DNA of 64,000 nt from assembly GCA_026770705.1 (NCBI GenBank), contig JANJGN010000034.1, positions 13,082,001 through 13,146,000 of the forward strand, in the 5' to 3' direction. This document shows positions 6,362 through 52,587 of the stretch, piece after piece. The notes under the pieces are model-generated. The model was given only the letters and a program-made list of their open reading frames with translations. It was not told the DNA's origin and searched no databases. The stretch is from Isurus oxyrinchus (Eukaryota). Positions within the stretch are counted from its first letter, which is position 1; each line of letters starts with the position of its first letter. The translations under genes were made by a program, and so were the position numbers.

Positions 6362-6478
6362 TTAACTTTGCATGTACTTGACATCGGCATACACAGTCGG
6401 TTCCTCCTTCTCTCCGTGTGCAGCAGTGTGCGCCAGTACGTTAAGATCGAGAGCGGCATAAACGATCCCTTGTTCGTC
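6362..6478 (-). CDS. Gene A terminal exon with ITIM (IVYAAL) and ITSM (TVYADV)
   Basis: NAGNAG acceptor ctctag|cag|; DEQGIVYAALDLNVLAHTAAHGEKEEPTVYADVKYMQS*. Confidence 0.85.
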   Translation of the reverse strand, partial: DEQGIVYAALDLNVLAHTAAHGEKEEPTVYADVKYMQS

Positions 6479-9400
6479 CTGCTAGAGTGTGCAGAAATAC
6501 AAGCAGAGTTTCAAACTCACATTTCATCCCAGTAAGGATCACAGTCTATAACTTACAACCACTTGTAATAACAACAGCAGAAGTTGTCAGAAATGCATGG
6601 GCAACAACAGCCAGAAAAGGACAAACATCCTGGGGGGGTTACCATTGACCAGAAACTGAACTGGACCAGCCTTATAAATACTGTGGCTACAAGAGCAGGT
6701 CAGTGGCTAGGAATCCTGCGGTGAGTAACTCACCTCCTGACTCCTCAAAGCCTGTCCACCATCTACAAGGCACAAGTCAGGAGTGTGATGGAATACTCCC
6801 CACTTGCCTGGATGTGTGCAGCTCCCACAACACTCAAGAAGCTCGACATCATCCTGGACAAAGCAGCCCCGCTTGATTGGCACCACATCCACAAACATTC
6901 ACTCCTTCCACCACCGACGCACAGTAGCAGCAGTGTGTGTACCATCTACAAGATGCACTGCAGGAGTTCACCGAGGCTCGTTAGACAGCACCTTCCAAAC
7001 CCAGGACCACTACCATCTAGAAGGACAAGAATAGCAAACACATGGGAACACCACCTTCTGGAAATCCCCCTCCAAGCCACTCACTATCCTGATTTGGAAA
7101 TATATGGGCCGCTCCTTCACTGTCGCTCTGTCAAAACCCTGGAACTCCCTCCCTAACACGGACTGCTGTGGTTCAAGAAGGCAGCTCACCACCACCTTCT
7201 CAAGGGGGAATTAGGGATGGGCAATAAATGCTGGTCCAGCCAGCGAAGCCCACATCCCGTGAATGAATGAAAAAATAAGCGTTAGAAATTTACCCTGGCT
7301 TGAGTTCAAAATGCATGGAATCGAATGGTGCATCTGTTTCTTTTCACTGGCCTGTGTAATGCAGACATCACTGCTGAGGCCAGCCTTTATTATCCCCTCC
7401 CATTGCCCCTGCAAAGGTGGTGGCAAGCTGCTTTCCTGAATCACCGCAGTCCACGTGATGTCGGTAAACCCGCTGTGCCTTTTCCTCAGCTGGTCATGTT
7501 TTGGTGCAGCTCAGTGGCTTGGGAGGACAATTCAGAGGGTTGTTAAGGGTCACCCATGGTGCTGTGGGTCTGCAGTCAGGCTCAGGCCATACCAGAGAGG
7601 AGGGGAAGATCACCTTCCCCAAAGGACGTTGGCGAACAAGTTGGGGGTTTAGGACAATGAGGTGGCTGCACATGGCAGTTTGTCGGTCCACAGCCTGAAA
7701 ATGGGTTATCTTTCCCCTATATTAGCACGTCGCTATTTAACAGGCACTCAGTGGAGTTGACTAGAGTGGGATGTGAGCACTTCACCTTCAGGCGCAAGGC
7801 TCATGAATAAGATCAGCATTTTATTTGAGAGTTTGAAACTCATCCTGCAGCTTTGATAGGATTTGAACACATAGCTCTGGATTTCTGCATTACTAGCCCA
7901 GGAACATAACACTATGCTACCATCCCCCTATTGCAATGGGAAACAACGTTAATTTTCATATCATAACCAAACAATTCCCCTTAGTACAAGTTTTAAATAA
8001 TATGATAAAACATTTTTCATAGCTTGTAACTTTAAAAATCAAGTTCTAACCCCACAAGGTGCATCTGAGGGATTTTATTCCATTAACAGGGTATATTTAC
8101 ACTTAGGCCCATGAGTCTAAAGCATCACAGAGGGGACTCTGTCTCAGCTGATGAAAAGACTGTGACTACTGGAGTTCCTTCTACTGAAATTGGGCTAAAG
8201 AAAATCCCACAAATTCCTCATCACAAGTTAGAACAAACACTGCATTTAACATACCCGAGTTAGTGCAAACGCTGCATTTAACATACCTGAGTTAGTGCAA
8301 ACACTGCATTTAACATACCAGAGTTAGTGCAAACACTGCATTTAACATACCCGTGTTAGTGCAAACACTGCATTTAACATACCAGAGTTAGTGCAAACAC
8401 TGCATTTAACATACTGAGTTAGTGCAAACACTGCATTTAACATATCCGAGTTAAAGCAAACACTGCATTTAACATACCCGAGTTACTGCATTTAACATAC
8501 CCGAGTTACTGCATTTAACATACCCGAGTTACTGCATTTAACATGCCCGAGTTACTGCATTTAACATGCCCGAGTTACTGCATTTAACATACCCGAGTTA
8601 CTGCATTTAACATGCCCGAGTTACTGCATTTAACATGCCCGAGTTACTGCATTTAACATACCCGAGTTAGTGCAAACACTGCATTTAACATGCCCGAGTT
8701 AGTGCAAACACTGCATTTAACATGCTTGAGTTAGTGCAAACACTGCATTTAACATGCCCGAGTTAGTGCAAACACTGCATTTAACATGCCCGAGTTAGTG
8801 CAAACACTGCATTTAACATGCCCGAGTTAGTGCAAACACTGCATTTAACATGCCCGAGTTAGTGCAAACACTGCATTTAACATGCCCGAGTTAGTGCAAA
8901 CACTGCATTTAACATGCCCAAGTTAGTGCAAACACTGCATTTAACATGCCCGAGTTAGTGCAAACACTGCATTTAACATGCCCGAGTTAGTGCAAACAAA
9001 TGCATTTAACATGCCCGAGTTAGTGCAAACACTGCATTTAACATACCTGTGTTAATGCAAACACTGCATTTAACATACCCGAGTTAGTGCAAACACTGCA
9101 TTTAACATACCCGAGTTAGTGCAAACACTGCATTTAACATACCCGAGTTAGTGCAAACACTGCATTTAACATACCCGAGTTACTGCATTTAACATACCCG
9201 AGCTACTGCAAACACTGCATTTAACATACCCGTGTTAATGCAAATACTGCATTTAACATGCCTGAGTTAATGCAAACACTGCATTTAACATGCCCGAGTT
9301 AGTGCAAACACTGCATTTAACATACCCGAGTTAATGCAAACACTGCATTTAACATGCCCGAGTTAATGCAAACACTGCATTTAACATGCCCGAGTTAGTG

Positions 9401-12400
9401 CAAACACTGCATTTAACATGCCCGAGTTAATGCAAACACTGCATTTAACATGCCCGAGTCAATGCAAACACTGCATTTAACATGCCCGAGTTAATGCAAA
9501 CACTGCATTTAACATGCCCGAGTTAATGCAAACACTGCATTTAACATGCCCGAGTTACTGCATTTAACATACCCGAGTTAGAGCAAACACTGCATTTAAC
9601 ATACACAAATTAATTCAAATACATACCTGAGTTTGGGAGGTGTTGACACATCTTTCTATGCAATTGGAAGAAAAGTATAATTTAAAGTGATTAATCTAAA
9701 CTTTACCAAACTATATAGTCAAAATGTTCACATTTCATATGGTTGTACTTTCTGTGGGCTCTCTCTTTTACCTATTTCCTCTTTTGCTAAATGAAGTTCA
9801 CTTAAGAACCCTCCCTCTCCCAATCTCCCCTCCTCTTTCCATGACAACTGTCCATCAGCAAACCAGTGGCTCGCTCCGGTCTTCCTGATTGGAATTGAGC
9901 ACTTTTCCTTGTTCTGATGAACGGTCAGAGGCCCAAAACGGCAACTCTGTTTCCCTCTCTAGTGACACTGCCTGACCTGCTCGGTATTTCCGGCATTTCC
10001 GGTTGGGGGACGCGATGACATCATGTCATTTGTCACTGGGCTAGCAATCCAGAGTCCCAGGCTAATGCTCTGGAGACACCCGGGTTTGAATCCTCCCACG
10101 GCAGGTGGGAGAAATTTGAATTCAATGAAAACCCGAATTAAAAGTCTGATGATGACTTTATGATTGTCGTTTAAAAAAAAAACCATCTGGTTCACGAATG
10201 CGCTTTAGGGAAGGAAATCTGCTGTCCTTTCCTGGCCTGGTCTACATGTGACTCCAGACCCACAGCAATGTGGTTGACTCTGCAATGCCCTCTGAGCAAG
10301 AGCAATAGGGATAGGCAATAAATTTTGGCCTAGGCAGTGACGCCCATACCCCAGTAATGAATTAAAGAAAAAATAATTATTGCATATGCTAATGAATACC
10401 ATTCATTCCTTGTCAAAATCAATAATGGATGGACTGCGGAGATTCATCACAAAGGGGCATGTAAAATGGGCGGTATTGGATAGTCCGTGCATTGCACTCC
10501 TCACATGGTATGCAACTCCACTGGTTGCAACAGATATCTAAGTGATCAATGCACCTAAGCACGCTTAAAAAAAAATTCCCATTACCTTGAGTTCGTCGCT
10601 TCCTCCAAATTAACGCCACAGTCAACACAATGAGAACAACACCCACCACAGGAGCCACTATTTTGATCATGTATAAAAATTCAGGTTTGCCTACGGAATT
10701 GGATTTGAAAGAAATAAGGACAATGTCATTGAAAGCGGGAATTGGAGCTGACGGGCTATACTCGGTGGTCAGTCATGTACACTGATTGTGGACAGTAATT
10801 ATTGCAGCTCCCCCTCGCACCTCTTCGATTACCAGGTTTGGTGGGGGATGTTGTTTGCATCACCTTCTCAAGGGCAATTAGGGCTGGGAAATCAATGCTG
10901 GCCCAGCCAGCGATGCCCATATCCCATGGAAGAATAAGAAAAAAGCTTTAATGAGGAAACAGTTGAAGGGAAAACTCAAGGGAAATGCAATTACATCCCG
11001 ATTCATGTGCTGATTAACTACTTTTTCAATGGCCCTTAGAATTAGGCCAGGATGATCAACAGGAAATAGCTCATGGTATTCCATTGTCTTCTGTGAGGGA
11101 ATTCATTAAAATCCTTCAGATATGTCCTCAAACCGAACCAAATTCCCTGTACTCACGGAGCCCAAGCAATCCTGTAATTGCAGGCAAATGAGCAGAAAAA
11201 TCTGCCTTTCTAGCCCTATGGAAATGAAAGAGGCTATTTGAAAAGTACCTTCATATATAATTAATATACTTCATCTACAAGGCACAGGTCAGGAGTGTGA
11301 TGGAATACTCTCCACTTGCCTGGATGAGTGCAGCTCCCACAACACTCAAGAAGCTCAACACTATCCAGGACAAAGCAGCCCTGCTTGATTGGCACCCCAT
11401 CCAAAAACATTAACTCCCTCCACCACTGACACACAGTAGCAGCAGTGTGTACCAGCTACAAGATGCACTGCAGCAATTTGCCAAGGATCCTCAGACGGCA
11501 CCTTCCAAACACACCATCTCTACCACCTAGAAGGACAAGGGCAGCAGACACATGGGGACACCACCGCCTGCAAGTTCTGCTCGGAGTCACTCACCATCCT
11601 GTCATGGAAATATATCAGCCATTCCTTCACTGTCTCTGGGTAAAAGTATTGGAACTCTCTCCCTAACAGCGCTGTGGGTGTATCTACACCACAGGGGCTG
11701 CAGCGGCTCAAGAAGGCAGCTCACCACCACCTTCTCAAGGGTGACGAGAGGCGGGAAATAAATGCTGGCCCAGCCAACGATTCCCACAAACCGTGAAAGA
11801 ATTTTTTAAAAATCTTCACATTGGCAACTGGTTTTCAAGAGTTTATAAAGCAACAGGAACTTGACAAGATTCAGGATAAAGATGGACAAATGGTGGGTCC
11901 TGAAAACATGACCGGCATTTGGGGTCTGAGGATCTATTGCTCGTTGAAATAAAGAAGTTGCGTTTTTATAGCACCCTCCATGATTTCCACAGATCTCAAA
12001 GTGAACTCATCATCCCAATCATCTAATTTCATGTGTGGCCGTTTATTAAATTCCAGCACTTACGCTTTTGTTAACAAAATGAAAGGGAATTTGGCCCTTT
12101 CTATCGCTCTATTAACTTGTACCTACCTTTAGGGGAGTCTTTTAAGATTATTTCCAGTTTGCCTTTCCCTGTCCCAATTGAGTTGGCAGCTTCACAGATC
12201 CAGGTCCCATTCATTAAATTGCTCACTTTCTTTATGAACACACTTGCATTTCTGGCCTCCAATCCTTCTGGTAACCTGGGGAGAGCCAACGATGCACATG
12301 TAAGAAATGCCTTGGTGACTAAATCTAGGTGATGAATATTAGCTCTGGCCTCCAAAGAGCAGATACGCTCCACCAGATTGTATCACTGGACGGTATGGGA

Positions 12401-15400
12401 TGTTACTCATGGTGTATAGTAGGGCATGAATGATATACATGAGATAAATGAGTTGAAGACCAATTTTCTGGCTCTAAATAGCAATGGGAAAGTCAAGATT
12501 GGAAGTACCGAGATAGAGGGACAATTTCAAGTACATTGACTTGATGATAAACACCAAAGTTATACCCAAGAATGCAATCCAGGTAGATTAGCTACAGCAA
12601 GAGGCATGAACAGTGATTTAAGTAGCCCCTGTAAATCCAAAAGCATCAGCATATAGCTGGAAAAGAAAATATCTGGTACGGTCAACAGCGTAGAGTGTTG
12701 CATCCATTGTATGTGAGATTTGGACTCTGTGGAAAGAGGATAAGAGGGGGATTAGGGATTTTGAAATGTGGGTTTGGCGGAGGATGCTCAGAATCAGCTG
12801 GATGGACAGGAAGGTCAAAGGGTGGCTTAGGTCAAGAGCAGAAGTTCAGGAATCAAAAGGGTTGCCAAGTACAGGCGGAGACAGAATGATGAGCAAGTAC
12901 AGAGATCGGAAACAAAGACGTGTCCTCAACTGAAGGAGGAATTGAAGGTAAAAAGAGAAGAGGAAGATGAAGAACTGAATGGGTGGATAGCACTGAGATG
13001 TGGATGGTGGAGGATTGAAGAAAACCAGTGAAGAAACTAGACAATGTCAGATAGCCCACTCAGGAGATGGTGATAACAAACGACTTATCATGGGCGACCA
13101 ATCCTATATTTTGACATTTCCCAAAGTCGCCCATAATGTAAATAATCTGAAAGATTTCTGGTACAGAACATCATACAACAGTACCACTCATCGCTGTTTG
13201 TTGAAGTCCTCCTGCATTTGGGGCCTTTCCCCAGGGCTGGGTTTATCAGCTCTTTTCCACCTGGGCTGCTTGGCCCATTCTACACACACTCCTGTATTGT
13301 GGTCAATATTTACCCCCATATTAAAGCCATTCAATCCCATCGCCCCCCCACTACCCCCATCATCTCATTCATAAATATTGCCTACATGATGATCTTACAC
13401 ACACTACATTTTCCCCTTCTCCATCTCTGCTAGCTTGGCAAGCAGAGGCAGATTCATTCTTAATGCTGTGTCTGGTCACTCACGATGTTCACTCTACCCA
13501 CCATGTCCTTAACTGACCCAAGGAAAAAATTACCCCAAGATACAAGTGGTTATTTTGGGTTTCAGTTGTATTTTGTAGGAAACACATTTCAAATGGCTCT
13601 CCAGGTTTTTAACACAATATATTTTTTTCACGAACCCAAATAGCGAGGCATAAAATTGGAAGTCTGTTGGTGTTCATTTGCGATCAGTTGGCCTTTCTGC
13701 ATCTCAAGTATGCAAAACTTATTACCACACTAGTTCAGCAAATGGCCTCTTGCTGCTCAGCCAATCTGTATCTACCGGCCCACGGGTCACAGATTCTCAG
13801 TTTGGCCTTTCTGAAGGCCGCTGAGGTACAGAGACAGTCAGTGAAGGTTCTTGTTAAACACCCTCGCATGACCACAGCTTTTTCACGAATGTTTTCCTTA
13901 AAGCAGAGACATGTAAACAAAACCCGTGCGGAGGGGCCTATTTCCAGTTCAACAACCAGATCACAAACTGTATGAAAGGATCTGAGCGATCCATGATCTA
14001 CACAGTTTTGAAAATATACACAATGCAATTCTTAATAAATGAAGCGCATATTTACCGTGACCAAGTGTAATTTGTTGCTGGGGGATTGGCTTTGGCCTCG
14101 CAATTGAGGGTAACATCCCTAGTGTTTTCACTCCAGTTGCCATCATAACCTGTTATGGTCACTTCTGGTGGATCTACAGAGGAAATTATTGTGATCATGT
14201 GGTCAGTACATCCAACACAGTAGAGAATCCACATTGGTGCATTTGTACAACAGGCCAGATTGGCAGGAAATGGTAGGTCAGTAGCTCTGGCCCGTCCACA
14301 TATTTAAAACAGTCTTTGCCTTTCATGTTAAGTGAATCACATGTCTTGTGTAAAGCAACGATAACCTCAAAGGAAAACCACCACAGTTTAACATGTCGCT
14401 TGAAAGTCGCTGCTTGCTCCGATAACCCATGATTCAGGCCATGAGGTTCATTCTGAACTGCAACTTCCGACTGCATTGATAGAGCAACTTCCACGTTGGA
14501 AAACACCCCACTCAGCCTAACCATCCAAAGTTGAAGTGACCCCGAATTGCTGCAAACAAGTCTTTACGCCCAGAAAATGATACAAGCTCTCTAACCTCCC
14601 GAAGAAAATGATCGCTTTTGAATTATTTAATATGTGCGGCTGGGGTTTACAAATGGGCGGCTTGTGAATCAACCACAACCGGTCACATTGAACCGGCCCA
14701 GCAATGCTGGAATCGCGGATATCCAGAAAATGTCAATTCAGCCAGTGAGGGAAGTTTAACACTTCTCTAGTTAGGGGAGGAGATTGCTGTCTCGTTACTC
14801 AACGGCAGCGCACTTTGAATTGGATTACATTATTTTTGTATTGATGAAAAAAGAGACGTGGAAGCTTTTTGTCTTCCACTCCTCAGGACACTTTACAAGA
14901 ATACTAAAATGAAGGGAAAACAATCTGTGTGTGTTTGTGTGTACAGGAAGCTACATATATTAATACACAGAGCCCAATCAGAGTCCGCTTGCCAACCAAC
15001 CAGCACTCTCTTCACATGCAGTATAAATCGTTGTTTTCTCCTTATATCGGTATTATAGTGAAGTGTCCTGATGAGTGCAAGGTGAAAAGCTTCAACGTGT
15101 CTCTTTTTTCTGCAATACTCAACTTCTGTCCTACCAAGCGACTATTGGAATTAATTGTCTTTGTATACGGAACTTACAGAGGATCAATAATTTTATCGTG
15201 TAAGTATCTGTGCTGTTTGATGCTGGGTGGGAGATAATACACGTCACTGTTTGACCATCATCATCGTCATTAGGTGCCATCTTGTACAGGCTGATAACAG
15301 TTGTTGTCCCGTTGTTGTTTTCAATCAGGGTTGTTGTATAGTTTCCATGGGAACCTGAAATCCACGTGATCTCGGCTGCTGGGTTCCCGTAGGTTGAAGT

Positions 15401-24400: not shown

Positions 24401-24618
24401 AACTGTGCTCTTTTCTGCCGATGCTGCCAGACCTGCTGAGTTTTTCCAGGTATTTCTGTTTCTGTTTTTGTTTTGCATTTTACCCTCTTTGGAGCAAGAG
24501 GGAAGCGGGAACGTTTCTTGAAAAATGCATCAAATGCAACATTCATATAGCAAATGTGAACCTTACCAGACAGGAGAAGAGCAATGCACGCAGTAGAAAT
24601 CCACGCCAGCTGAGTCAT
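6362..24618 (-). CDS. Gene A: nectin/PVR-like V-C-C Ig receptor with ITIM+ITSM tail (inhibitory), 8 coding exons, about 400 aa
   Basis: join(complement) 24567-24618, 16887-17225, 15178-15471, 14056-14173, 12127-12275, 10586-10690, 9627-9655, 6362-6478 = 1203 nt. All introns are GT-AG with compatible phases (1,1,1,2,1,1,0) and the frame is open to TAA. Nectin/PVR hallmarks are YPPEVTITGYDGNW and a third Ig domain split by a phase-2 intron. Confidence 0.88.
6605..7275 (+). mobile_element. L2/CR1-clade LINE 3' end with (TGAA)n tail (shark HER1-like)
   Basis: MEYSPLAWM.AAPTTLKKLD; tail ggcaataaatgctgg...cccacatcccgtgaatgaatgaa. Further copies at about 11275-11800, 17658-18500, 19845-20170, 33960-34285, 37100-37752(-), 50780-51005, 63255-63690. 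Confidence 0.82.
8236..9603. repeat. Minisatellite, 32-bp unit gagttagtgcaaacactgcatttaacatRccc with 23-bp deletion variants
   Basis: Direct tandem array of roughly 40-50 units with no spacers. Confidence 0.95.
9627..9655 (-). CDS. Gene A exon 7, 29-bp cytoplasmic exon (ERCVNTSQTQ)
   Basis: Pyrimidine tract + gcatag| acceptor and CAG|gtatgt donor; supplies the required phase 1->0 change. Confidence 0.72.
10025..10370 (+). mobile_element. tRNA-derived SINE (shark HE1-like)
   Basis: B-box-like ggtttgaatcc and a LINE-shared 3' tail; related copies at about 20780-21110(-), 27118-27470, 33545-33915, 35950-36270(-). Confidence 0.75.
10586..10690 (-). CDS. Gene A exon 6, transmembrane (uncharged core)
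   Basis: GKPEFLYMIKIVAPVVGVVLIVLTVALIWRKRRTQ; ccgtag| acceptor, CAAG|gtaatg donor. Confidence 0.88.
12127..12275 (-). CDS. Gene A exon 5, third Ig domain second half
   Basis: LPEGL...NGTWICEAANSIGTGKG; ccccag| acceptor, AAAG|gtaggt donor. Confidence 0.9.
14056..14173 (-). CDS. Gene A exon 4, third Ig domain first half
   Basis: YPPEVTITGYDGNW...LNCEAKANPPATNYTWSR; ctgtag| acceptor, CG|gtaaat phase-2 donor. Confidence 0.92.
14847..15109. mobile_element. About 260-bp TIR element with hammerhead-like cores in both TIRs (copy at 42848-43110)
   Basis: tgtcCTGATGAGtgcaaggtGAAAagctTCaac at 15064-15096 and an inverted copy at 14856-14892. Confidence 0.7.
15178..15471 (-). CDS. Gene A exon 3, second Ig (C-type) domain
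   Basis: ccaag|CA acceptor, T|gtaagt donor; VANCTS.YGNPAAEITW...DGQTVTCIISHP resembles nectin D2. Confidence 0.92.
16887..17225 (-). CDS. Gene A exon 2, IgV domain
   Basis: ctgcag|CT acceptor and TTAG|gtgtgt donor; LPC...W...DQGMYTC IgV motifs; LFPQG in the FG loop. Confidence 0.93.
17658..18500 (+). mobile_element. LINE fragment at the inner end of the left arm
   Basis: Same junction as 37100-37752(-) in the right arm, but more diverged than the arms themselves. Confidence 0.82.
21288..24475 (+). mobile_element. Penelope-like element with an inverted 3' end (pLTR) copy at its 5' side
   Basis: 21742-24475 encodes RT+GIY-YIG with stops and frameshifts; 21288-21741 is the reverse complement of about 24055-24475. 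Confidence 0.92.
24366..24404 (+). ncRNA. Minimal type I hammerhead ribozyme-like motif in the Penelope 3' end
   Basis: agtt-CUGUUGA-a-gggtc/gactc-GAAA-cg-UC-aact; copies at 999-1037(-), 21389-21427(-), 28026-28064(-), 41667-41705(+), 46472-46510(-). Confidence 0.65.
24567..24618 (-). CDS. Gene A exon 1, signal peptide MTQLAWISTACIALLLS
   Basis: ATG, hydrophobic leader, phase-1 donor TCTG|gtaagg; clearly similar to the gene B leader. Confidence 0.8.
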
Positions 24619-43200: not shown

Positions 43201-46200
43201 ACTTCCCTCACTGGCTGAATTGACATTTTCTGGATATCCGCGATTCCAGCATTGCTGGGCCGGTTCAATGTGACCGGTTGTGGTTGATTCGCCAGCCGCA
43301 CATATTAAATAATTCAAAAGCGATCATTTTCTTCGGGAGGTTAGAGAGCTTGTATCATTTTCTGGGCGTAAAGACTTGTTTGCAACAATTCGGGGTCACT
43401 TCAACTTTGGATGGTTAGGCTGAGTGGGGTGTTTTCCAGCGTGGAAGTTGCTCTATCAATGCAGTCGGAAGTTGCAGTTCAGAATGAACCTCATGGCCTG
43501 AATCATGGGTTATCGGAGCAAGCAGCGACTTTCAAGCGACATGTTAAACTGTGGTGGTTTTCCTTTGAGGTTATCGTTGCTTTACACAGGACATGTGATT
43601 CACTTAACATGAAAGGCAAAGACTGTTTTAAATATGTGGACGGGCCAGAGCTACTGACCTACCATTTCCTGCCAATCTGGCCTGTTGTACAAATGCACCA
43701 ATGTGGATTCTCTACTGTGTTGGATGTACTGACCACATGATCACAATAATTTCCTCTGTAGATCCACCAGAAGTGACCATAACAGGTTATGATGGCAACT
43801 GGAGTGAAAACACTAGGGATGTTACTCTCAATTGCGAGGCCAAAGCCAATCCCCCAGCAACAAATTACACTTGGTCACGGTAAATATGCGCTTCATTTAT
43901 TAAGAATTGCATTGTGTATATTTTCAAAACTGTGTAGATCATGGATCGCTCAGATCTTTTCATACAGTTTGTGATCTGGTTGTTGAACTGGAAATAGGCC
44001 CCTCCGCACGGGTTTTGTTTACATGTCTCTGCTTTAAGGAAAACATTCGTGAAAAAGCTGTGGTCATGCGAAGGTGTTTAACAAGAACCTTCACTGACTG
44101 ACTCTGTACCTCAGCGGCCTTCAGAAAGGCCAAACCGAGAATCTGTGACCCGTGGGCCGGTAGATACAGATTGGCTGAGCAGCAAGAGGCCATTTGCTGA
44201 ACTAGTGTGGTAATAAGTTTTGCATACTTGAGATGCAGAAAGGCCAACTGATCGCAAATGAACACCAACACACTTCCAATTTTATGCCTCGCTATTTGGG
44301 TTCGCGGAAAAAATATATTGTGTTAAAAACCTGGAGAGCCATTTGAAATGTGTCTCCTACAAAATACAACTGAAACCCAAAATAACCACTTGTATCTTGG
44401 GGTAATTTTTTCCTTGGGTCAGTTAAGGACATGGTGGGTAGAGTGAACATCGTGAGTGACCAGACACAGCATTAAGAATGAATCTGCCTCTGCTTGCCAA
44501 GCTAGCAGAGATGGAGAAGGGGAAAATGTAGTGTGTGTAAGATCATCATGTAGGCAATATTTATGAATGAGATGATGGGGGTAGTGGGGGGGCGATGGGA
44601 TTGAATGGCTTTAATATGGGGGTAAATATTGACCACAATACAGGAGTGTGTGTAGAATGGGCCAAGCAGCCCAGGTGGAAAAGAGCTGATAAACCCAGCC
44701 CTGGGGAAAGGCCCCAAATGCAGGAGGACTTCAACAAACAGCGATGAGTGGTACTGTTGTATGATGTTCTGTACCAGAAATCTTTCAGATTATTTACATT
44801 ATGGGCGACTTTGGGAAATGTCAAAATATAGGATTGGTCGCCCATGATAAGTCGTTTGTTATCACCATCTCCTGAGTGGGCTATTTGACATTGTCTAGTT
44901 TCTTCACTGGTTTTCTTCAATCCTCCACCATCCACATCTCAGTGCTATCCACCCATTCAGTTCTTCATCTTCCTCTTCTCTTTTTACCTTCAATTCCTCC
45001 TTCAGTTGAGGACACGTCTTTGTTTCCGATCTCTGTACTTGCTCATCATTCTGTCTCCGCCTGTACTTGGCAACCCTTTTGATTCCTGAACTTCTGCTCT
45101 TGACCTAAGCCACCCTTTGACCTTCCTGTCCATCCAGCTGATTCTGAGCATCCTCCGCCAAACCCACATTTCAAAATCCCTAATCCCCCTCTTATCCTCC
45201 TTCCACAGAGTCCAAATCTCACATGCAATGGATGCAACACTCTACGCTGTTGACCGTACCAGATATTTTCTTTTCCAGCTATATGCTGATGCTTTTGGAT
45301 TTACAGGGGCTACTTAAATCACTGTTCATGCCTCTTGCTGTAGCTAATCTACCTGGATTGCATTCTTGGGTATAACTTTGGTGTTTATCATCAAGTCAAT
45401 GTACTTGAAATTGTCCCTCTATCTCGGTACTTCCAATCTTGACTTTCCCATTGCTATTTAGAGCCAGAAAATTGGTCTTCAACTCATTTATCTCATGTAT
45501 ATCATTCATGCCCTACTATACACCATGAGTAACATCCCATACCGTCCAGTGATACAATCTGGTGGAGCGTATCTGCTCTTTGGAGGCCAGAGCTAATATT
45601 CATCACCTAGATTTAGTCACCAAGGCATTTCTTACATGTGCATCGTTGGCTCTCCCCAGGTTACCAGAAGGACTGGAGGCCAGAAATGCAAGTGTGTTCA
45701 TAAAGAAAGTGAGCAATTTAATGAATGGGACCTGGATCTGTGAAGCTGCCAACTCAATTGGGACAGGGAAAGGCAAACTGGAAATAATCTTAAAAGACTC
45801 CCCTAAAGGTAGGTACAAGTTAATAGAGCGATAGAAAGGGCCAAATTCCCTTTCATTTTGTTAACGAAAGCGTAAGTGCTGGAATTTAATAAACGGCCAC
45901 ACATGAAATTAGATGATTGGGATGATGAGTTCACTTTGAGATCTGTGGAAATCATGGAGGGTGCTATAAAAACGCAACTTCTTTATTTCAACGAGCGATA
46001 GATCCTCAGACCCCAAATGCCGGTCATGTTTTCAGGACCCACCATTTGTCCATCTTTATCCTGAATCTTGTCAAGTTCCTGTTGCTTTATAAACTCTTGA
46101 AAACCAGTTGCCACTGTGAAGATTTTTTAAAAATTCTTTCACGGTTTGTGGGAATCGTTGGTTGGGCCAGCATTTATTTCCCGCCTCTCGTCACCCTTGA

Positions 46201-49200
46201 GAAGGTGGTGGTGAGCTGCCTTCTTGAGCCGCTGCAGCCCCTGTGGTGTAGATACACCCACAGTGCTGTTAGGGAGGGTGTTCCAAGACAGGTGATTCAC
46301 TTAACATGAAAGGCAAAGACTGTTTTAAATATGTGGATGGGCCAGAGGTACTAACCTGCCATTTCCTGCCACTCTGGCCTGTTGTACAAAAGCACCAATG
46401 TGGATTCTCTACAAAAGCAGAATTACCTGGAAAAACTCAGCAGGTCTGGCAGCATCGGCAGAGAAGAACAAATTTGACGTTTCGATTCCTCATGACCCTT
46501 CAACAGAACTAAATAAAAATAGGAGATGCCTGAAATACAAGCTGGTTAAAGGGGGGGGGGGGGGGGGGGTGGGGGGGGGGGCAAGAAAAGTGGGGGTGGG
46601 GGTGGTTGTAGGGACAAGCAAGCAGTGATTGGAGCAGATAATCAAAAGATATCACAGACAAAAGAACAAAGAGGTGTTGAAGTTGGTGATATTATCTAAA
46701 AGAATGTGCTAATTAAGAATGGATGGCAGGACATGCAAGGTACAGATAGCTCTAGTGGGGGTGGGGTGAAATAAGACTAAAAGGGCATAAAAGGTATAGA
46801 TTTAAAAATAATGGAAATAGGTGGGAAAAGAAAAATCTATATAAATTATAGGAAAAACAGAAGGGAGGGGGGAGAAACGGAAAGGGGGTGGGGATGGAGG
46901 AGGGAGTTCAAGATCTAAAGTTGTTGAACTCAATATTCAGTCCTGGAGGCTGTTCAGTGCCTAGTTCGAAGATGTCAATTTTGGAAGGTGCTGTCTAAGG
47001 ATCCTTGGTGAGTTGCTGCAGTGCATCCTGTAGTTGGTACACTCACTGCTGTAACTGTGCATCGGTGGTGGAGGGAATGAGTGTTTGTGAATGGGGTGCC
47101 AATCAAGAAGTCTGCTTTGTCCAGGCTGGTGTCGAGCTCCTAAGTGTTGTGGGAGCTGCACTCAACCAGGCAAGCGGGGAGCATTCCATGACACTCCTGC
47201 ATTGTGCCTTGTAGATGAAGTATATTAATTATATATGAAAGTACTTTTCAAATAGCCTCTTTCATTTCCATAGGGCTAGAAAGGCAGATTGTTCTGCTCA
47301 TTTGCCTGCAATTACAGGATTGCTTGGGCTCCCCGAGTACAGGGAATTTGGTTCATTTTGAGGACATATCTGAAGGATTTTAATGAATTCCCTCACATGA
47401 GACAATGGAATACCATGAGCTATTTCCTGTTGATCATCCTGGCCTAATTCTAAGGGCCATTGAAAAAGTAATTAATCAGCACATGAATCGGGATGTAATT
47501 GCATTTCCCTTGAGTTTTCCCTTCAACTGTTTCCTCATTAAAGCTTTTTTCTTATTCTTCCATGGGATGTGGGCATCGCTGGCTGGGCCAGCATTGATTT
47601 CCCAGCCCTAATTGCCCTTGAGAAGGTGATGCAAACAACGTCCCCCACCAAACCTGGTAATTGAAGAGGCGCGAGGGAGAGGTGCAATAATTACTGTCCA
47701 CAATCAGTGTACATGACTGACCACCGAGCATATACCGTCAGCTCCAATTCCCGCTTTCAATGACATTGTCCTTATTTCTTGCAAAGCTATTTCCGTAAAT
47801 GATACTGCTGTATTTGTCACAGTTTCCCCGCCCCCCATTGTGTCCGAGTATTGCCCTGCACATTACAATCATCGGCTTCATTTTCCAGGCCTGCAGGATC
47901 GCCTCCCATCTTCAACCAGCCCCAAAATCTCCGTCTTCAGCCAAACAGTTGCCCCAGTTCACAGAATCACAGAATTTTGACAGCGCAGTAGGAGCCCATT
48001 TGGCCCATCGAGTCTGCACTGACTCCCCCTCTACAGTTCGCACCGGTCGCCTCAGGCCAACAACAGCGGTGCAGATCCTCACCCTTCAATGTTAACCGGA
48101 GTGTCAGACCTCACGTCTTCTGCATCAGGAGGATTTCTCAGTCCCAGCATTGAAATGCCGCCGCCATTTTGTTTATTACTGCCCCATATCCTGCCCCAGC
48201 CCCTCCCCCAAAACCATAGTCCACCATTGGTGGCAGAGCCTTCAGTCAACTCCAGCCAAGCTGTCTTGCAATACACCATTACACATTCCTCAGAAGCTCC
48301 TTCCTTTCCAATTCTGTTTCGGCCTCTCTCCTCATCCCCACATGCAGCTTGCGAAGGCTCTTAGCTACTTGCCACATGAAATGCATGAAAGTGGTATCCC
48401 CCACATTAAAAAAGTGTCCCTATTGCCCTCCCCAAGCCCAACTAACAAGAGATTGTTCCTGCTTTTCCTTCGTTTCATCCCCAAGGCTCTTTCCTTCCAT
48501 CTTATTCTTCCTTCCTTGCTTCCATCCCATTTCTTGCAGCGATGAATGAGTGAAGGCCTACGAGGCAGCAGCTGGAAGTGATTGGGCTCAGGACCTTGGT
48601 TTCACAAGCGTTTGCTGGTTGCCCAAGGTTGTGATGGTTTTACCGCGTCCACCACCGCCCAATATGTCAGGCCTAACTCAATTGATCCCATCACTGCATC
48701 TGATACAGGAAACAACAACTGCCCACCCCGTTGGATAAAAGAAATTAATAACAGAAGCAAGGTTATTGACAGGAAACTCAGAAAGATGATGTATTTTTTT
48801 ATTACTAACTTGTACCATTGTTTTACTTCCTGTTCGTTTCTATTTGATGATTTCGCAGATCATGGGAATGGAAAGCTAATCAACCCATGTGTGACATTGA
48901 GAGTAGTGGTGTTTGCTCTTTCCACGTTTCTCATTGTTCTATTCATCAGGCGAAAATGCAGACCAGCAGGTAAATCATCAGAAAATGAAAGGTGAAACCA
49001 AATACCTAAACGACTACAGATATTTCAACTCGGCGCTGGTGTTTAATAGTTCCACCATAATATCTTTCAACTTTCTTACGTTACTCTGGTCTTACCTTCC
49101 CACCAGCTTGCTCTCTCATTCAATTCAATTTCCGAGGGTCGGCTATTTGCTAATATTCTACCACAAGCCTGCAAACTATGTAGTTTACACTTCCTCCCAG

Positions 49201-52200
49201 CCTGCTCCCTATATAGACTCTCCTCTCTTCTCCCAGCGTCTTCATCTCCATTGCTCCTTTACTTATGATGCATCCTCCCATGCTGCTGCTTCTGATGGGT
49301 ATGTCTTCCTTCTTCCTCAGCTGAGGATCCCCACTACCACCTGACTAATTGACAGGGCCCCTAACTATGACCGCCCCTTTTCTCTCTCGTCAACTCACCC
49401 CCTTCCCCTATCAGCACCCCCTGCCCCCCTACACCAAAGCTGCTATAGGATTCTACTTGCCCTTATCTTTCACTCCACTATCTGCTACAATCCAACAGGT
49501 CATTGTCTGCCATTTCTGCCACCCCCAGTAGGATACCACCACCAAGTGCATCTTCCCCTCCCCTTCCCTTTGAGCATTTTGAAAGGGACCAATCCCTTCG
49601 TGACACCCCAGCTCACTAATCAATGACTTCCCCCACTTCCCGCCACACCAAATCCAGAAGATGTACCACTTGCCTTGTTACCTCCCCACATCACCCCACC
49701 CCCCCAACCCTTTCCCAAATTCCAGGGCTGCAAGTGCTTTTTCAGGGGAAACAGTGATTTATTTACACCTTTTTCAATTTGACATATTGCCTTTTTGCTG
49801 CTTACAATGCAGTCTCCTCTAAATCGGGCGACCAAAAGCACATTGACGATTGCTTTGTACACCACGTCCATCCAGTCTGCAACTGTGTTCCCCAATTCTT
49901 GTCATTTTAATTCTCCGCTCCACTCCCACTTTGACCTCTCTGTCCTCAGCCTGCTGCAGTGTTGTAATAAGGCCAATGGAAGTCAGAGGGGAAGCAATAT
50001 ATTTTTCGATTTACACCCGCCTGGACTTAATTTTGAGTTCAGTAATTTCAGATCATAACCTCTGCCCCTCTTTCTTGGTCAGCAGCTGTTGGAGATCTTT
50101 CTGCTGTTACCATTTACACCTCCTCTACAGCCTTCTTTTGTCTCTTTGCATGCCCCACTGCCAACCACTTTTACTTATTGTCAACGTTCCTTGTGTCATT
50201 TAATCACATAAGTCGCTTTAAGCTTGTTGCTTCTGTCACCTTTTCCAGCCCTGACAGACGGGGCAACAGTGGAAATGTTTGATCTGTTTCTGCCTCCACT
50301 GGAGCTGCCTGGCCTGCTGAGAATTTCCAGCAATCTCTGCCTTTATTTCAGATTTCCAGCAACTGCAGTATCTTGCTTTTGCACCCTCAATCAGAATTGT
50401 TGAGCTGGTTTACACCAGCGCATTCCTGCCTTTCATCAGGTGAAACAGCAGATGCGAATGTGCAATAACACAAGTCTCCTAATTTATATTTACAGCAGAA
50501 ACCTCTGTCAACGTTCCCGTTCAAAGAAAGACAATTGAGCAGGTAATTTAAAGCTACATTAATAGTTAGTAATTTCAGCTCTTTACTAAACATTTCACTT
50601 CTACTCTTGACAGCCTCAACTGTTTGCACCCAACCGGAACCACATGTTAGCAGTTGGTGTTTGAGACTGTAGCATTTAGCACAAATGGTTCACGTCTTAG
50701 TGACATCCCAGACAGTTACCTATGGAATATGTCAGTGTTCTTTACCACTAAAAATATTGTTCCAATGGCTTTGCATCTTTCCTCCAAGCCACTCGCCATC
50801 CTGACTTGGAAATATATCAGCCGTTCCTTCACTGTCGCTGGGTCAAATCCTGGAACTCCCTCCCTAACAGCACTGTGGGTGTACCTACACCACAGGGACT
50901 GCAGCGGCTCAAGAATGCAGCTCACCACCAGCTTCTCAAGGGCGGCTAGTGATGGGCAATAAATGCTGGGCCCAGCCAGCGAAGCCCATATTCCCATGAA
51001 TGAAAAGTAAGAAAAAATAGCAGAAGAAAAATGACACAGCTTTTCATTGATATAAGACCATAAGACCATAAGACATAGGAGCAGAAATTAGGCCATTCGG
51101 CCCATTGAGTCTGCTCCGCCATTCAATCATTGCTGATAAGTTTCTCAATCCCATTCTCCGGCCTTTGATATGAAAGCAGAAAATGCTGGAAAAATTCAGA
51201 ATGGACTCGAAACGTTGACTCTGCCCCTCTCTCCACAGATGCTGCCAGACCTGCTGAACTTTTCCAGCATTTTCTGTTTCTCTTTCAGATTCCCAGCATC
51301 CGCAGTGTTCAGCTGTTCGTTGACTGTCACCGGGACACACAGATTTGAGATAATTGGCAAAAAACCAGTGAGATGTTAAGGTTTCTTTTTCCTCCATGGA
51401 CCAGGCTGTTATGATCAGAAAGGGATGCTGAATAGGCTGTGGAAACAGATTCAATAGTAAATTTCAGAAGAAAATTGGGCAAATGTTTCAAAAGGAAACT
51501 CAGCAAGGTTATGCAGAAAGAGTAAGGGAGTGGGACTAATTAGGGAGAACTCTTTCTAAAGGCTGGCACAGGCAGAACAGGCTGAGGAACAAGCTTCGGT
51601 TCAGTGTGAATTCATGATTCTGTGAATGATTCTCATTTACTACCCAGAGAGTTGTTGATGTTTTTGTCCCCCTGTTCATTGACTGTGCTGTACCTGCCTG
51701 TCCCCATGTCGTCTTAGCTCTTCTGTTGATGCGAATGCCTGAATGTTCCTGGATTGAACCGTATTCTCTTTATTTTCCAGGATTTGTCAGATGTGAACGC
51801 CACTTACATGGTAGGGTGGAAGACATATTTATTTCAAGTGAGACTTTATTTAGGCAAATGAACATTATTGAGTTACTAACGAATCACACTTGTGGCAACT
51901 TCCCACAGGGCCTGAACTTAGCAGAAGAATCGGTCTACAGTGAATTACAGAGGTATAATTTATTCTGCTTCATTAACTGTGAGCCAATCCAAAGACAACA
52001 TGAATATATCTGACTGTCGTCTATCCATCTCTGCATCTATCACTTATCTATCTATCTATCCATCTATCTATCTATCTGTCTCTCTGCCTGTCTGTCTGTC
52101 TATCTATCTATCTGTTTGTCTATCTATCTGTTTATCTGCCTATCTGTCCAACTGTCTGCCTGTCACTCTGTCTGCCCCTCTGTGTGTCTCTCTGTGTGTC

Positions 52201-52587
52201 TCTCTGTCTGTCTGTCATGCCTGTCTGTCATGTCCATCTGTCTGCCTGTCTCTCTGTCTGTCTGCCTTTCATGTCTGTCTGCCATGCCTGTCTGCCTTCC
52301 TGTCTATCATGTCTGTTTGTTTGTCTGTCTATCTATTACGTATGTCTGTTTGTCTTTCTATCTATCATGTCTGTCTATCGAGCATGACTGTCCATCTCTT
52401 GGACTGCCTGTCTCCCACTCTCTTTCTCTCTCTCCCCCTCTGCCTGTGAAAGATTCTTTCAGCCCCCTTCCACTTCCAGCCATGATCTTAGAAGTAACTA
52501 CTGTGCTGTTCCCATTTACTTTGCACAGATTGTTTTTCAGGCAATGACTCGAGTAACATTTGGTTTAAAATCTCTTTTTTCAGATAA
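31184..52587 (+). CDS. Gene B: nectin/PVR-like V-C-C Ig receptor with TM arginine and intrinsic ITAM (activating), 10 coding exons, about 394 aa
   Basis: join 31184-31232, 38185-38523, 42486-42779, 43762-43879, 45660-45808, 48859-48969, 50496-50542, 51781-51810, 51909-51952, 52584-52587 = 1185 nt. All introns are GT-AG, the phases are compatible and the frame ends ...YSELQR*. Confidence 0.83.
34560..35190 (-). mobile_element. CR1-like LINE 3' fragment
   Basis: VRPHLEYCEQFW.PYLRKDILALEAVQRRFTRL. Confidence 0.88.
38185..38523 (+). CDS. Gene B exon 2, IgV domain
   Basis: 339 bp like the gene A V exon; 11 amino-acid differences; donor TTAG|gtatgt. Confidence 0.93.
39258..41790 (+). mobile_element. 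Young Penelope-like element with an uninterrupted RT-GIY-YIG ORF, in intron 2 of gene B only
   Basis: ORF 39200-41251; the empty site in the other arm is at about 16135-16150. Confidence 0.94.
42486..42779 (+). CDS. Gene B exon 3, second Ig domain
   Basis: One amino-acid difference (N/S) from gene A; intact splice sites. Confidence 0.92.
43762..43879 (+). CDS. Gene B exon 4, third Ig domain first half
   Basis: Protein identical to gene A exon 4. Confidence 0.92.
45660..45808 (+). CDS. Gene B exon 5, third Ig domain second half
   Basis: Protein identical to gene A exon 5. Confidence 0.9.
46413..46975 (-). mobile_element. Penelope-like 3' end / pLTR fragment
   Basis: GLNIEFNNFRS C-terminus plus the same tail as the other copies. 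Confidence 0.85.
48859..48969 (+). CDS. Gene B exon 6, transmembrane exon containing Arg
   Basis: ttcgcag| acceptor, GCAG|gtaaat donor, phase 1-1; DHGNGKLINPCVTLRVVVFALSTFLIVLFIRRKCRPA. Confidence 0.82.
49180..50380 (+). mobile_element. Old degenerate Penelope-like relic
   Basis: Decayed matches (accaccaagtgcatcttcccctc; GLNFEFSNFRS; gatttccagcaactgcagta tail). Confidence 0.7.
50496..50542 (+). CDS. Gene B exon 7, cytoplasmic (AETSVNVPVQRKTIEQ)
   Basis: NAGNAG acceptor tacag|cag|, donor CAG|gtaatt, phase 1->0; shares E-x-x-VN / TGTCAAC with gene A exon 7. Confidence 0.68.
51781..51810 (+). CDS. Gene B exon 8, first half of ITAM (DLSDVNATYM)
   Basis: Strong acceptor ctctttattttccag| and donor ATG|gtaggg; read in phase 0. 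Confidence 0.78.
51909..51952 (+). CDS. Gene B exon 9, second half of ITAM (GLNLAEESVYSELQR)
   Basis: cttcccacag| acceptor after a 98-bp intron; donor AG|gtataa. Confidence 0.78.
52020..52440. repeat. Degenerate (TCTA)/(TCTG) microsatellite
   Basis: Low-complexity tetranucleotide array in the last intron of gene B. Confidence 0.9.
52584..52587 (+). CDS. Gene B putative terminal exon (A TAA stop)
   Basis: ctcttttttcag|ATAA completes the AG|A Arg codon, then stop. Confidence 0.55.

What the first reader, a model, noticed from the sequence alone, without database searches (positions are those of the whole stretch)
6362..52587. Head-to-head paired receptors on a nectin/PVR scaffold: an ITIM+ITSM gene and an ITAM gene with near-identical ectodomains
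Seen in sequence: two complete spliceable genes share a V-C-C nectin-like ectodomain (12 amino-acid differences) but have different TM and tail exons. A ends with IVYAAL...TVYADV; B ends with YMGL-NLAEESV-YSEL. Established knowledge: this is the design of CEACAM1/CEACAM3, SIGLEC5/14 and SIGLEC11/16, and nectins/CD155 are common virus entry receptors. Mammalian nectins signal through afadin-binding tails (CD155-alpha has an ITIM), and I know of no nectin-like receptor with its own ITAM. Inference: an inhibitory receptor and an activating counter-receptor for the same ligand or pathogen, possibly undescribed in cartilaginous fish. Novelty is not verified.
Basis: partly seen in the sequence, partly recalled or inferred. 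Interest (0 to 1): 0.95.

Follow-up and report, generated by a model that had tools for sequence, protein, structure and literature searches.

The report
Shark paired nectin-like immune receptor genes
Two head-to-head shark genes encode almost the same nectin-like outer part but opposite signalling tails (inhibitory ITIM/ITSM versus activating ITAM). The same pair is found across shark orders with its outer parts repeatedly copied onto each other, so it looks like an old, so far undescribed paired immune-receptor system.

Summary

- **Gene models.** Both genes are complete and spliceable, with GT/AG at every junction. Gene A (- strand, 24618 to 6362) gives 401 aa; gene B (+ strand, 31184 to 52587) gives 394 aa.
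- **Ectodomain.** V-C1-C2 is nectin/PVR-like and differs at 12 residues (11 in V, 1 in C1).
- **Tails.** A ends in ITIM (IVYAAL) plus ITSM (TVYADV). B carries a canonical ITAM (NATYM|GL-x7-YSEL) split at the classical intron position.
- **Expression.** Spliced contigs in three runs from two related organisms cover B's TM, cytoplasmic and both ITAM exons. A's tail was not tested with reads.
- **New here.** This is not a recent duplication. RefSeq "nectin-1-like" models from at least 12 shark species carry the same two leader/tail types. Within a species the two ectodomains are 95-98% identical; between orders, 45-60%. AU tests reject one clade of ITAM-type ectodomains (p=1.5e-53 and 9e-9). This points to recurrent gene conversion between inverted paralogues.
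- **V exon.** It diverges three times faster than the surrounding introns, mostly non-synonymously.
- **Corrections.** The TM arginine in B is polymorphic and not conserved. A's last exon probably starts at 6481, and B's ITAM-2 exon ends at 51952.

Signalling and ligand are inferred. I found no paper describing this family.

The parts
24567..24618 (-). Gene A leader exon (MTQLAWISTACIALLLS + 1 nt; donor GTAAGG)
   Evidence: It is 94% identical to the leader of Cetorhinus ITIM-type P0171.
16887..17225 (-). Gene A V-domain exon
   Evidence: Pfam V-set, E=8.6e-13.
15178..15471 (-). Gene A C1 exon (C2-set_2)
14056..14173 (-). Gene A first half of the third Ig domain (C2a)
12127..12275 (-). Gene A second half of the third Ig domain (C2b)
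10586..10690 (-). Gene A transmembrane exon (..KIVAPVVGVVLIVLTVALIWRKRRTQ). The arm homology ends 2 nt upstream of it.
   Evidence: The TM core is identical to Cetorhinus P0171.
9627..9655 (-). Gene A small cytoplasmic exon (E)RCVNTSQTQ
6362..6481 (-). Gene A last exon: ITIM IVYAAL, ITSM TVYADV, then the stop codon
   Evidence: (85-92% identical to the Cetorhinus and Carcharodon ITIM tails)
31184..31232 (+). Gene B leader exon (MALMVWMSMAYVALLS + 1 nt; donor GTGAGT)
   Evidence: It is 94% identical to the Carcharodon and Cetorhinus ITAM-type leaders.
38185..38523 (+). Gene B V-domain exon. It has 13 nt / 11 aa differences from gene A.
42486..42779 (+). Gene B C1 exon
43762..43879 (+). Gene B C2a exon
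45660..45808 (+). Gene B C2b exon
48859..48969 (+). Gene B transmembrane exon. The Arg codon at 48900-48902 is polymorphic with Gly.
   Evidence: Contigs X1 rec3, X2 rec11 and X5 rec21 lie on it with only 110 nt each; 48900 A>G is seen in X1 and X5.
50496..50542 (+). Gene B cytoplasmic exon (A)ETSVNVPVQRKTIEQ. Orthologues have Y[VI]N here (Grb2-type YxN); this genome has Ser.
   Evidence: (position 50505 is covered by the same-depth contig; C>A gives Tyr in organism B)
51781..51810 (+). ITAM exon 1: DLSDVNATYM
   Evidence: (bin depth equals contig depth x 32/200)
51909..51952 (+). ITAM exon 2: GLNLAEESVYSELQ plus 2 nt
   Evidence: (bin depth equals contig depth x 45/200, so no read-through)
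52584..52587 (+). Probable start of gene B's last exon: completes Arg, then TAA, then the 3' UTR
   Evidence: acceptor TTTTTTCAG. Orthologues end ..LQR.
10692..18299 (-). Conversion/duplication arm A
37096..47797 (+). Conversion/duplication arm B. It is interrupted by a LINE insertion (39267-41793) and a ~700-nt insertion (46286-46980).

Best explanation
The window holds an old pair of shark immunoreceptor genes of the nectin/PVR branch of the Ig superfamily. They are arranged head to head, with start codons 6.5 kb apart.

**The two genes.**
- Gene A is an inhibitory form: V-C1-C2, TM, ITIM + ITSM.
- Gene B is an activating form: the same V-C1-C2, a different TM, and its own cytoplasmic canonical ITAM. 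In most species B also has a Grb2-type YxN motif upstream of the ITAM.

**How the pair evolves.** Leader, TM and tail exons evolve as separate orthologous lineages across sharks. The ~7-10 kb block with the V, C1 and C2 exons and their introns is repeatedly homogenised between the two inverted genes by intrachromosomal gene conversion. After each conversion the V domain picks up mainly amino-acid-changing differences on its C-C'-C''-F-G face.

**Likely function (inferred).** Both receptors see the same or nearly the same ligand, which could be another nectin-family protein or a pathogen adhesin. A would recruit SHP-type phosphatases. B would recruit Syk/ZAP-70-type kinases, plus Grb2 where the tyrosine is kept. 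The activating copy would then counterbalance or act as a decoy for the inhibitory one, as in CEACAM1/CEACAM3 and SIGLEC5/14.

**Shown:** gene structures, homology, splicing of B's tail, conservation, concerted evolution.

**Inferred:** signalling partners, ligand, cell type.
For: **Structure.** Complete open models with consensus splice sites.

**Family.** PDB and Pfam hits to nectin-1, PVR, CD226 and CD96. The AF2 model of V has pLDDT 88.7 with Ig V-type strands.

**Expression.** One contig in each of runs X1, X2 and X5 lies on the TM exon with only 110 nt. The same contig's depth also accounts for the coverage at 50505 and over 51781-51810 and 51909-51952, and it does not read on past about 51952.

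**Orthologues with both tail types**.
- Both types in one species: Cetorhinus, Carcharodon, Stegostoma, Pristiophorus, Hemiscyllium, Scyliorhinus torazame.
- One type found: Chiloscyllium, Mustelus (ITAM); Rhincodon, Heterodontus, Heptranchias, S. canicula (ITIM).

**Concerted evolution.**
- Within-species ectodomain identity is 94.9-97.6%, against 45-60% between orders. Tails are 20-25% identical between types, while ITIM-type tails reach 31-65% and most ITAM-type tails 41-52% across species. Cetorhinus ITAM scored about 22% there because it was misaligned; it aligns well.
- Trees of V and C1 pair the two types by species. AU tests reject one clade of ITAM-type ectodomains at p=1.5e-53 and p=9e-9.

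**Uneven arm identity.** It ranges from 86% to 100% along the arms, which one duplication would not give.

**V exon.**
- 3.8% divergence against 1.26% in core non-coding DNA (Fisher p=8e-4).
- pN/pS = 2.3.
- 9 of 11 changes lie in the C, C-C', C'', F and G elements of the model.

**ITAM.** It fits D/E/NxxYxxL/I-x7-YxxL/I, with the exon boundary inside the first tyrosine module, as stated for classical ITAMs in PMC4536121.

**Orientation.** Opposite orientation as a permissive layout for conversion in paired receptors is described in PMC5112662 and PMC13278318.
Against: - No reads were laid on gene A's tail or on either leader junction. Those junctions rest on splice consensus and on RefSeq models of other sharks.
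- The runs are only guessed to be RNA. The individual joints were not among the 15 printed, so B's splicing is deduced from contig geometry and depth arithmetic.
- pN/pS > 1 is not significant on its own (Fisher p=0.53).
- The window's gene B lacks the YxN tyrosine (Ser; one search shows the reference base in organism A).
- Stegostoma's first ITAM module is YTSV, not YxxL/I.
- There are no functional, ligand or cell-type data.
Confidence: 0.78

Rival explanations
1. A recent, species-specific inverted segmental duplication of one nectin-like gene. One copy then captured foreign TM and ITAM exons, so there was no long history and no gene conversion.
For: The arms are 98-99% identical over about 6 kb, introns included. 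The homology stops right at the TM-exon acceptor.
Against: - The same two leader types and tail types are linked in at least 12 shark species from six orders.
- The window's leaders and tails are each closer to their type in Cetorhinus and Carcharodon than to each other.
- Independent near-identity of the two ectodomains is seen in Cetorhinus, Stegostoma and Pristiophorus.
- AU tests reject the alternative topology.
- Identity along the arms is uneven.
Confidence: 0.05
2. Assembly artefact: one gene has been falsely duplicated in inverted orientation and joined to unrelated downstream sequence.
For: Inverted near-identical arms are a known failure mode of assemblers. The window has one N gap (58861-59030).
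Against: - The arms differ by structured substitutions, a 2.5-kb LINE and a 0.7-kb insertion.
- Contigs of organism B, probably genomic DNA (the kind of run is not on record), cover the B-specific region (table 8).
- cDNA-like contigs carry B's TM exon with 28-462 nt of upstream sequence that does not lie in the intron just before it. That fits splicing from the ectodomain exons, though those exons were outside the laid stretch.
- Both gene types are present in independent assemblies of other sharks.
Confidence: 0.02
3. Both are ordinary adhesion nectins or non-immune IgSF molecules, and the tyrosine motifs are not used for opposing immune signalling. For example, B could be mainly an endocytic or phagocytic receptor, or both could be co-expressed for cis regulation.
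For: - The closest named relatives are adhesion nectins.
- Tissue and cell type are unknown.
- The YxN tyrosine is lost in this genome and in S. torazame.
Against: - Neither gene has a C-terminal xYV afadin/PDZ motif, whereas shark true nectins in the same searches do (P0197, P0200).
- ITIM+ITSM and ITAM are conserved while the surrounding tail sequence drifts.
- The ITAM has the classical split-exon layout.
- The family is a separate clade from the nectin-1/-3/PVRL2-like clade (95/100 support).
Confidence: 0.12

Closest known systems
CEACAM1 / CEACAM3-type paired receptors (mammals, Xenopus, reptiles)
   Same: - An inhibitory ITIM+ITSM gene and an activating gene with an ITAM or ITAM-like motif in its own tail.
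- Near-identical ligand-binding domain.
- Opposite transcriptional orientation.
- Similarity maintained by gene conversion, followed by non-synonymous change in the binding face (PMC5112662, PMC13278318).
   Different: - The ectodomain here is nectin/PVR-type: a V domain with the canonical disulphide cysteines, then C2-set_2. No CEACAM appeared among the 60 PDB hits listed for V.
- The conversion tract spans all three Ig domains and their introns (about 7-10 kb), not only the N exon.
- The ITAM is fully canonical.
PVR (CD155) and the TIGIT / CD96 / CD226 axis
   Same: - Same Ig subfamily.
- V-C-C ectodomain with an ITIM-bearing tail, as in PVR-alpha and CD96.
- The ITAM-type tails of most sharks carry E-x-Y-[VI]-N, which resembles the D/E-I-Y-V/M-N Grb2-binding motif of DNAM-1 (PMC4647266).
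   Different: - Mammalian activating and inhibitory members have unrelated ectodomains and are unlinked genes. None has an ITAM.
- In the tree built here the shark family is a separate clade.
- Orthology to any human gene was not established.
Nectin-1 to nectin-4
   Same: Best sequence matches of the V domain (nectin-1, E=4e-17). Three-Ig architecture. RefSeq names the shark genes 'nectin-1-like'.
   Different: There is no afadin-binding C-terminus: A ends KYMQS and B ends ELQR. The tails are immunoreceptor tails. The family is a separate clade.
SIGLEC5/14, SIGLEC11/16, KIR, SIRP paired receptors
   Same: Concerted evolution of the ligand-binding part of an inhibitory/activating pair.
   Different: Those activating partners signal through a charged TM residue and DAP12 or FcR-gamma. 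Here the ITAM is in cis and the TM arginine is not conserved.

Membership tests
Nectin/PVR-like Ig subfamily (broad) | N-terminal V-set domain most similar to nectin/PVR/CD226/CD96/TIGIT V domains | tested here: met
   nectin-1 4e-17, nectin-3 3e-13, CD226 1e-9, PVR 2e-9, CD96 1e-7.: V-set 5.8e-13.
Nectin/PVR-like Ig subfamily (broad) | Second domain of the CD80-like C2-set_2 type, followed by a third Ig domain (V-C-C) | tested here: met
   PF08205, 3.7e-17.: PVR D2 3e-12. The C2a and C2b exons give weak Ig_3/ig hits and align to the third domain of orthologues.
True nectins (nectin-1 to -4) | C-terminal PDZ/afadin-binding motif (xYV) | tested here: not met
   A ends ..KYMQS* and B ends ..ELQR*. 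Shark true nectins found in the same search end ..GMYV and ..AVYV. The motif is described in PMC7286890.
True nectins (nectin-1 to -4) | Falls inside the nectin-1/-3/PVRL2-like clade | tested here: not met
   the paired family is its own clade (95/100) beside the nectin clade (97/97). The sampling contained no human PVR, CD226 or TIGIT.
Classical ITAM | D/E/N-x-x-Y-x-x-L/I-(x)7-Y-x-x-L/I | tested here: met
   N-A-T-Y-M-G-L-NLAEESV-Y-S-E-L. It is conserved in seven of the eight other shark species with an ITAM-type tail. Stegostoma has YTSV in the first module.
Classical ITAM | [quoted passage not shown] | tested here: met
   YM|GL, phase-0 intron 51811-51908. The rule is stated in PMC4536121.
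Classical ITAM | Binds tandem-SH2 kinases (Syk/ZAP-70) when doubly phosphorylated | not testable with these tools
   Needs biochemistry.
ITIM/ITSM inhibitory tail | [SIVL]xYxx[IVL], followed by TxYxx[VI] | tested here: met
   IVYAAL, then 17 residues, then TVYADV. It is conserved in 11 orthologues.
Paired activating/inhibitory receptors maintained by gene conversion | Near-identical ligand-binding region with opposing tails, the similarity being species-specific (concerted) | tested here: met
Paired activating/inhibitory receptors maintained by gene conversion | Opposite transcriptional orientation of the two genes | tested here: met
   In this window, A is on the - strand and B on the + strand, head to head.
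Paired activating/inhibitory receptors maintained by gene conversion | Same ligand, opposite cellular outcome | not testable with these tools
   Needs binding and reporter assays.
Adaptor-dependent activating receptors (DAP12/FcR-gamma coupled) | Conserved basic residue in the TM segment | tested here: not met
   The Arg codon at 48900 is A/G (Arg/Gly) within one sample and Gly in organism B. It is Gly in Carcharodon and Cetorhinus, and no ITAM-type orthologue has a basic residue in the TM core.
CD226-type ITT-like (pYxNx) signalling | Conserved D/E-x-Y-[VIM]-N in the tail | tested here: inconclusive
   ETYVN, EVYIN, EHYIN and LYINV are present in seven orthologues. The window's gene B has ETSVN and S. 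torazame has ETQAN. Organism B has Tyr.

The most novel reading that the evidence does not exclude
This locus is a shark counterpart of the mammalian PVR-TIGIT/CD96-CD226 checkpoint system, built differently. One nectin-like ectodomain is shared by an inhibitory and an activating gene and has been kept in register by gene conversion since before galeomorph and squalomorph sharks split. By published timetrees that is hundreds of millions of years (from memory, not tested here). That would make it one of the longest-lived concertedly evolving paired receptors known. The YxN-plus-ITAM tail would then hint that CD226-type signalling descends from an ITAM-bearing nectin-like receptor, and the pair would be a candidate for the still unknown NK-type or myeloid receptors of cartilaginous fish.
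Probability: 0.25. Interest if true: 0.88.

Novelty: new member of a known kind. Interest (0 to 1): 0.7.

Why it matters
Paired inhibitory/activating receptors that track each other by gene conversion are a hallmark of host-pathogen arms races. They have been documented mainly in tetrapods (CEACAM, SIGLEC, KIR, SIRP).

Here the same logic appears in sharks, on a nectin/PVR scaffold with a canonical ITAM in cis. It is conserved across shark orders. Innate and NK-like receptors of cartilaginous fish are poorly known, so this gives that field a concrete, testable candidate system.

It also bears on two evolutionary questions:
- How the PVR/TIGIT/CD226 axis arose.
- How long concerted evolution can hold two genes together.

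On the practical side, the many RefSeq 'nectin-1-like' models in sharks are probably immunoreceptors rather than adhesion nectins.

Tried and rejected
- **Leader exons.** A blind scan for them by hydrophobicity and phase-1 donors was ambiguous. They were fixed only after homologues gave the leader sequences.
- **ITAM tail alone.** A database search with only the ITAM tail (P0167 residues 317-396) found nothing but itself. The origin of the tail exons therefore stays open.
- **Remnant tail exons.** tblastn found no remnant of the other tail type in either gene.
- **Read-through of B past 51952** (..QRYNLFCFINCEPIQRQHEYI*, as in the Cetorhinus RefSeq model). Rejected for the observed transcripts, because contig coverage stops at about 51952.
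- **TM arginine as an adaptor-docking residue.** Rejected as a conserved feature.
- **CEACAM membership.** Considered because of the tail layout, and rejected on the ectodomain.
- **Literature.** Seven searches gave no description of this family.
- **Joined protein.** The joined protein was never built or searched.
- **Reads.** Read laying allowed only one call, and I spent it on gene B's tail.
- **Not used.** No complex prediction or fold search was run. No claim needed one.


Full report
**1. What is in the sequence**

The window contains a large inverted repeat. blastn of the two halves gives collinear arms at 10692-18299 (- strand) and 37096-47797 (+ strand). Arm B alone is interrupted by a 2.5-kb LINE (39267-41793) and a ~0.7-kb insertion (46286-46980).

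Inside each arm lie four exons of identical length: V 339 nt, C1 294 nt, C2a 118 nt and C2b 149 nt. They have identical splice sites and differ by 13, 2, 1 and 1 nt.

Outside the arms the genes differ.
- **Gene A (-):** TM exon 10690-10586, a 29-nt exon 9655-9627, and a last exon encoding QDEQG-IVYAAL-DLNVLAHTAAHGEKEEP-TVYADV-KYMQS*.
- **Gene B (+):** TM exon 48859-48969, then 50496-50542 (AETSVNVPVQRKTIEQ), 51781-51810 (DLSDVNATYM) and 51909-51952 (GLNLAEESVYSELQ), with a probable 52584 acceptor that completes Arg and then TAA.

I placed them through homologues: A at 24618-24567 (MTQLAWISTACIALLLS) and B at 31184-31232 (MALMVWMSMAYVALLS). The genes are therefore head to head, with start codons 6.5 kb apart.

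Every junction is AG/GT and the phases close both frames: 401 aa for A and 394 aa for B (corrected for the ITAM-2 exon end at 51952 read off). These lengths equal those of the Cetorhinus RefSeq models, once the read-through end of the Cetorhinus ITAM model is allowed for.

**2. What family it belongs to**

Searching exon by exon:
- The V exon matches nectin-1 D1 best (E=4e-17), then nectin-3, CD226, PVR, CD96, nectin-2/-4 and TIGIT.
- The C1 exon matches PVR D2 best (3e-12), then nectin-1, -2 and -3.
- Pfam gives V-set and C2-set_2.
- An AF2 model of the V exon is confident (pLDDT 88.7) with V-type strands.

Neither gene has the C-terminal xYV afadin/PDZ motif of true nectins, whereas shark true nectins recovered in the same searches do (PMC7286890). 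In a tree of 30 full-length relatives, the paired family is its own clade (95/100). It sits beside a nectin-1/-3/PVRL2-like clade and a second elasmobranch subfamily with ITIM-like tails.

**3. Is gene B expressed and spliced as claimed?**

One contig lies on the TM exon with only 110 nt of its length in each of three runs: X1 (695 nt, depth 13.9), X2 (1038 nt, depth 13.9) and X5 (701 nt, depth 52.1).

A contig of the same depth is the only cover at position 50505, in the cyt exon. The bin depths at 51620-51819 and 51820-52019 equal contig depth x 32/200 and x 45/200 in all three runs. That is exactly the 30-nt and 44-nt ITAM exons, with no read-through beyond about 51952. The contigs carry 340-430 nt more at the 3' side and 28-462 nt at the 5' side that do not lie in the adjacent introns.

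The individual joints were not among the 15 printed, and the runs are only guessed to be RNA. This is therefore strong indirect evidence of a spliced mRNA, not a printed junction.

Organism A matches the window at 98.5-100% in the unique-region contigs listed. Organism B is 2-4% diverged, so the ITAM gene is transcribed in two related sharks.

The same table shows two variants:
- 48900 A>G (Arg to Gly in the TM) within one sample of organism A and in organism B.
- 50505 C>A (Ser to Tyr) in organism B.

**4. The pair is old and evolves in concert**

A full HMMER scan with the V exon, followed by look-ups and two further searches, recovered RefSeq 'nectin-1-like' models from Carcharodon, Cetorhinus, Stegostoma, Chiloscyllium, Hemiscyllium, Rhincodon, Heterodontus, Scyliorhinus (two species), Mustelus, Pristiophorus and Heptranchias.

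They fall into the same two types.
- **ITIM type:** MT.LAWIS.ACIALL-type leader, with a tail ..[IT][VIT]YA.L[DN][LF]..E..T[VL]YA[DG][VI]K.. .
- **ITAM type:** MA.MVW-type leader, with a tail ..E.Y[VI]N[VI]P.QRK..Q[DE]S..[IV]NATY..[LV].L.EQSVY..[LI][QK]R.

The window's leaders and tails are 77-94% identical to the matching type in Cetorhinus and Carcharodon.

The ectodomains behave differently. The two types are 94.9% (Cetorhinus), 97.6% (Stegostoma), 95.3% (Pristiophorus) and 95.9% (window) identical within a species, but only 45-60% identical between orders.

V and C1 trees pair the two types by species. Forcing the ITAM-type ectodomains into one clade is rejected (AU p=1.5e-53 for V, p=9e-9 for C1).

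Within the window, identity along the arms is uneven: 99-100% around C2, about 98% around C1, 97% around V, and 86-93% at both ends. A single duplication would not give this pattern.

The simplest reading is recurrent gene conversion of the V-C1-C2 block between two old inverted paralogues. The CEACAM literature describes exactly this layout and process for paired receptors (PMC5112662, PMC13278318).

The two types do lie on the same contig in Cetorhinus, Stegostoma and Carcharodon.

**5. Divergence of V**

- The V exon differs at 13 of 339 nt, against 63 of 5011 nt in core non-coding DNA (Fisher p=8e-4). The C exons differ at 4 of 561 nt (p=0.0015).
- Counts are 11.5 non-synonymous against 1.5 synonymous changes (pN/pS 2.3, not significant alone). 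pN in V exceeds the non-coding rate (p=2e-4).
- Nine of the 11 replaced residues lie in the C strand, C-C' loop, C'', F or G elements of the model. Those elements make up 47 of 112 residues, giving a binomial p of about 0.009 by my own arithmetic.
- From established structures of nectin, PVR and TIGIT complexes, that sheet is the binding face.
- Between species V is also the fastest part: 78-80% identity to Carcharodon, against 94-95% for C1.

**6. Motifs**

- B's ITAM fits the classical consensus, including the N at -3. It has the exon boundary inside the first tyrosine module, which PMC4536121 states is always the case for classical ITAMs.
- Most ITAM-type orthologues also carry E-x-Y-[VI]-N. 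This resembles the D/E-I-Y-V/M-N Grb2-binding motif of DNAM-1 (PMC4647266). The window's gene B has Ser there and S. torazame has Gln, so this motif is dispensable or is being lost in some lineages.
- The TM arginine noted by the first stage is a derived, polymorphic allele. That argues against adaptor docking and for signalling through the cis ITAM.

**7. Novelty and limits**

The proteins are public, but only as automatic annotations. Seven full-text searches found no description of nectin-like receptors with an ITAM, or of paired receptors of this family in cartilaginous fish. The library misses many subscription papers.

The kind of system is well known: paired receptors kept alike by conversion. 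This would be a new member, on a new scaffold, in an early-branching vertebrate lineage.

Signalling partners, ligand, cell type and any role of pathogens are inferred.

The joined spliced proteins were deliberately not built or searched. All searches used single exons by reference.

The species was not identified. It is a lamniform close to Carcharodon, judged by protein identity.

Noticed in passing
window 39267-41793 (ORF 39182-41248 +): A LINE-type reverse-transcriptase element is inserted in the V-C1 intron of gene B only. Related copies lie at 1327-3141, 22009-24116 and 28340-29613. The insertion either postdates the last conversion of that segment or blocks it.
   Followed up: partly
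window 48900 and 50505: Two coding variants in gene B. Arg/Gly in the TM segment is polymorphic within one sample. Ser (this genome) versus Tyr (related organism and most other sharks) falls at the YxN motif.
   Followed up: partly
window 55993-56116 (-): Two ITIM-like pieces (HREIVYSSPNM.. and ..SEGIVYGILKQK*) resemble the tail of the single-V receptor half of Heptranchias P0004. They sit in different frames, so this is probably a decayed tail exon of a TIGIT/PVRIG-like neighbour.
   Followed up: partly
window 61510-62601 (-): An intact 364-codon open frame of a rhodopsin-family GPCR (Pfam 7tm_1, E=2.6e-19).
   Followed up: partly
window 52020-52376: A long TCTG/TCTA microsatellite lies in what is probably the last intron of gene B, between the ITAM-2 exon and the 52584 acceptor.
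   Followed up: no
proteins P0191-P0195 (Heptranchias, Heterodontus, Pristis, Hemiscyllium, Rhincodon): A second elasmobranch V-C-C subfamily, present in a batoid. Its ITIM/ITSM-like tail keeps its frame, but in most species the tyrosines are replaced (ITVFATLNLNV..ATVNADVN). It looks like a receptor that lost its inhibitory tyrosines.
   Followed up: no
proteins P0002, P0151, P0153 (Carcharodon carcharias): The RefSeq models of the great white's ITAM-type genes join V directly to the TM exon, skipping C1-C2 (207 aa). There are at least two near-identical gene copies. This suggests either short isoforms or extra copies of the activating gene.
   Followed up: no
protein P0038 (Lethenteron reissneri, 'titin-like'): A lamprey multi-Ig membrane protein with a canonical ITAM (YEPLKPPAENAYDKL) in its tail appeared among the V-domain hits.
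   Followed up: no
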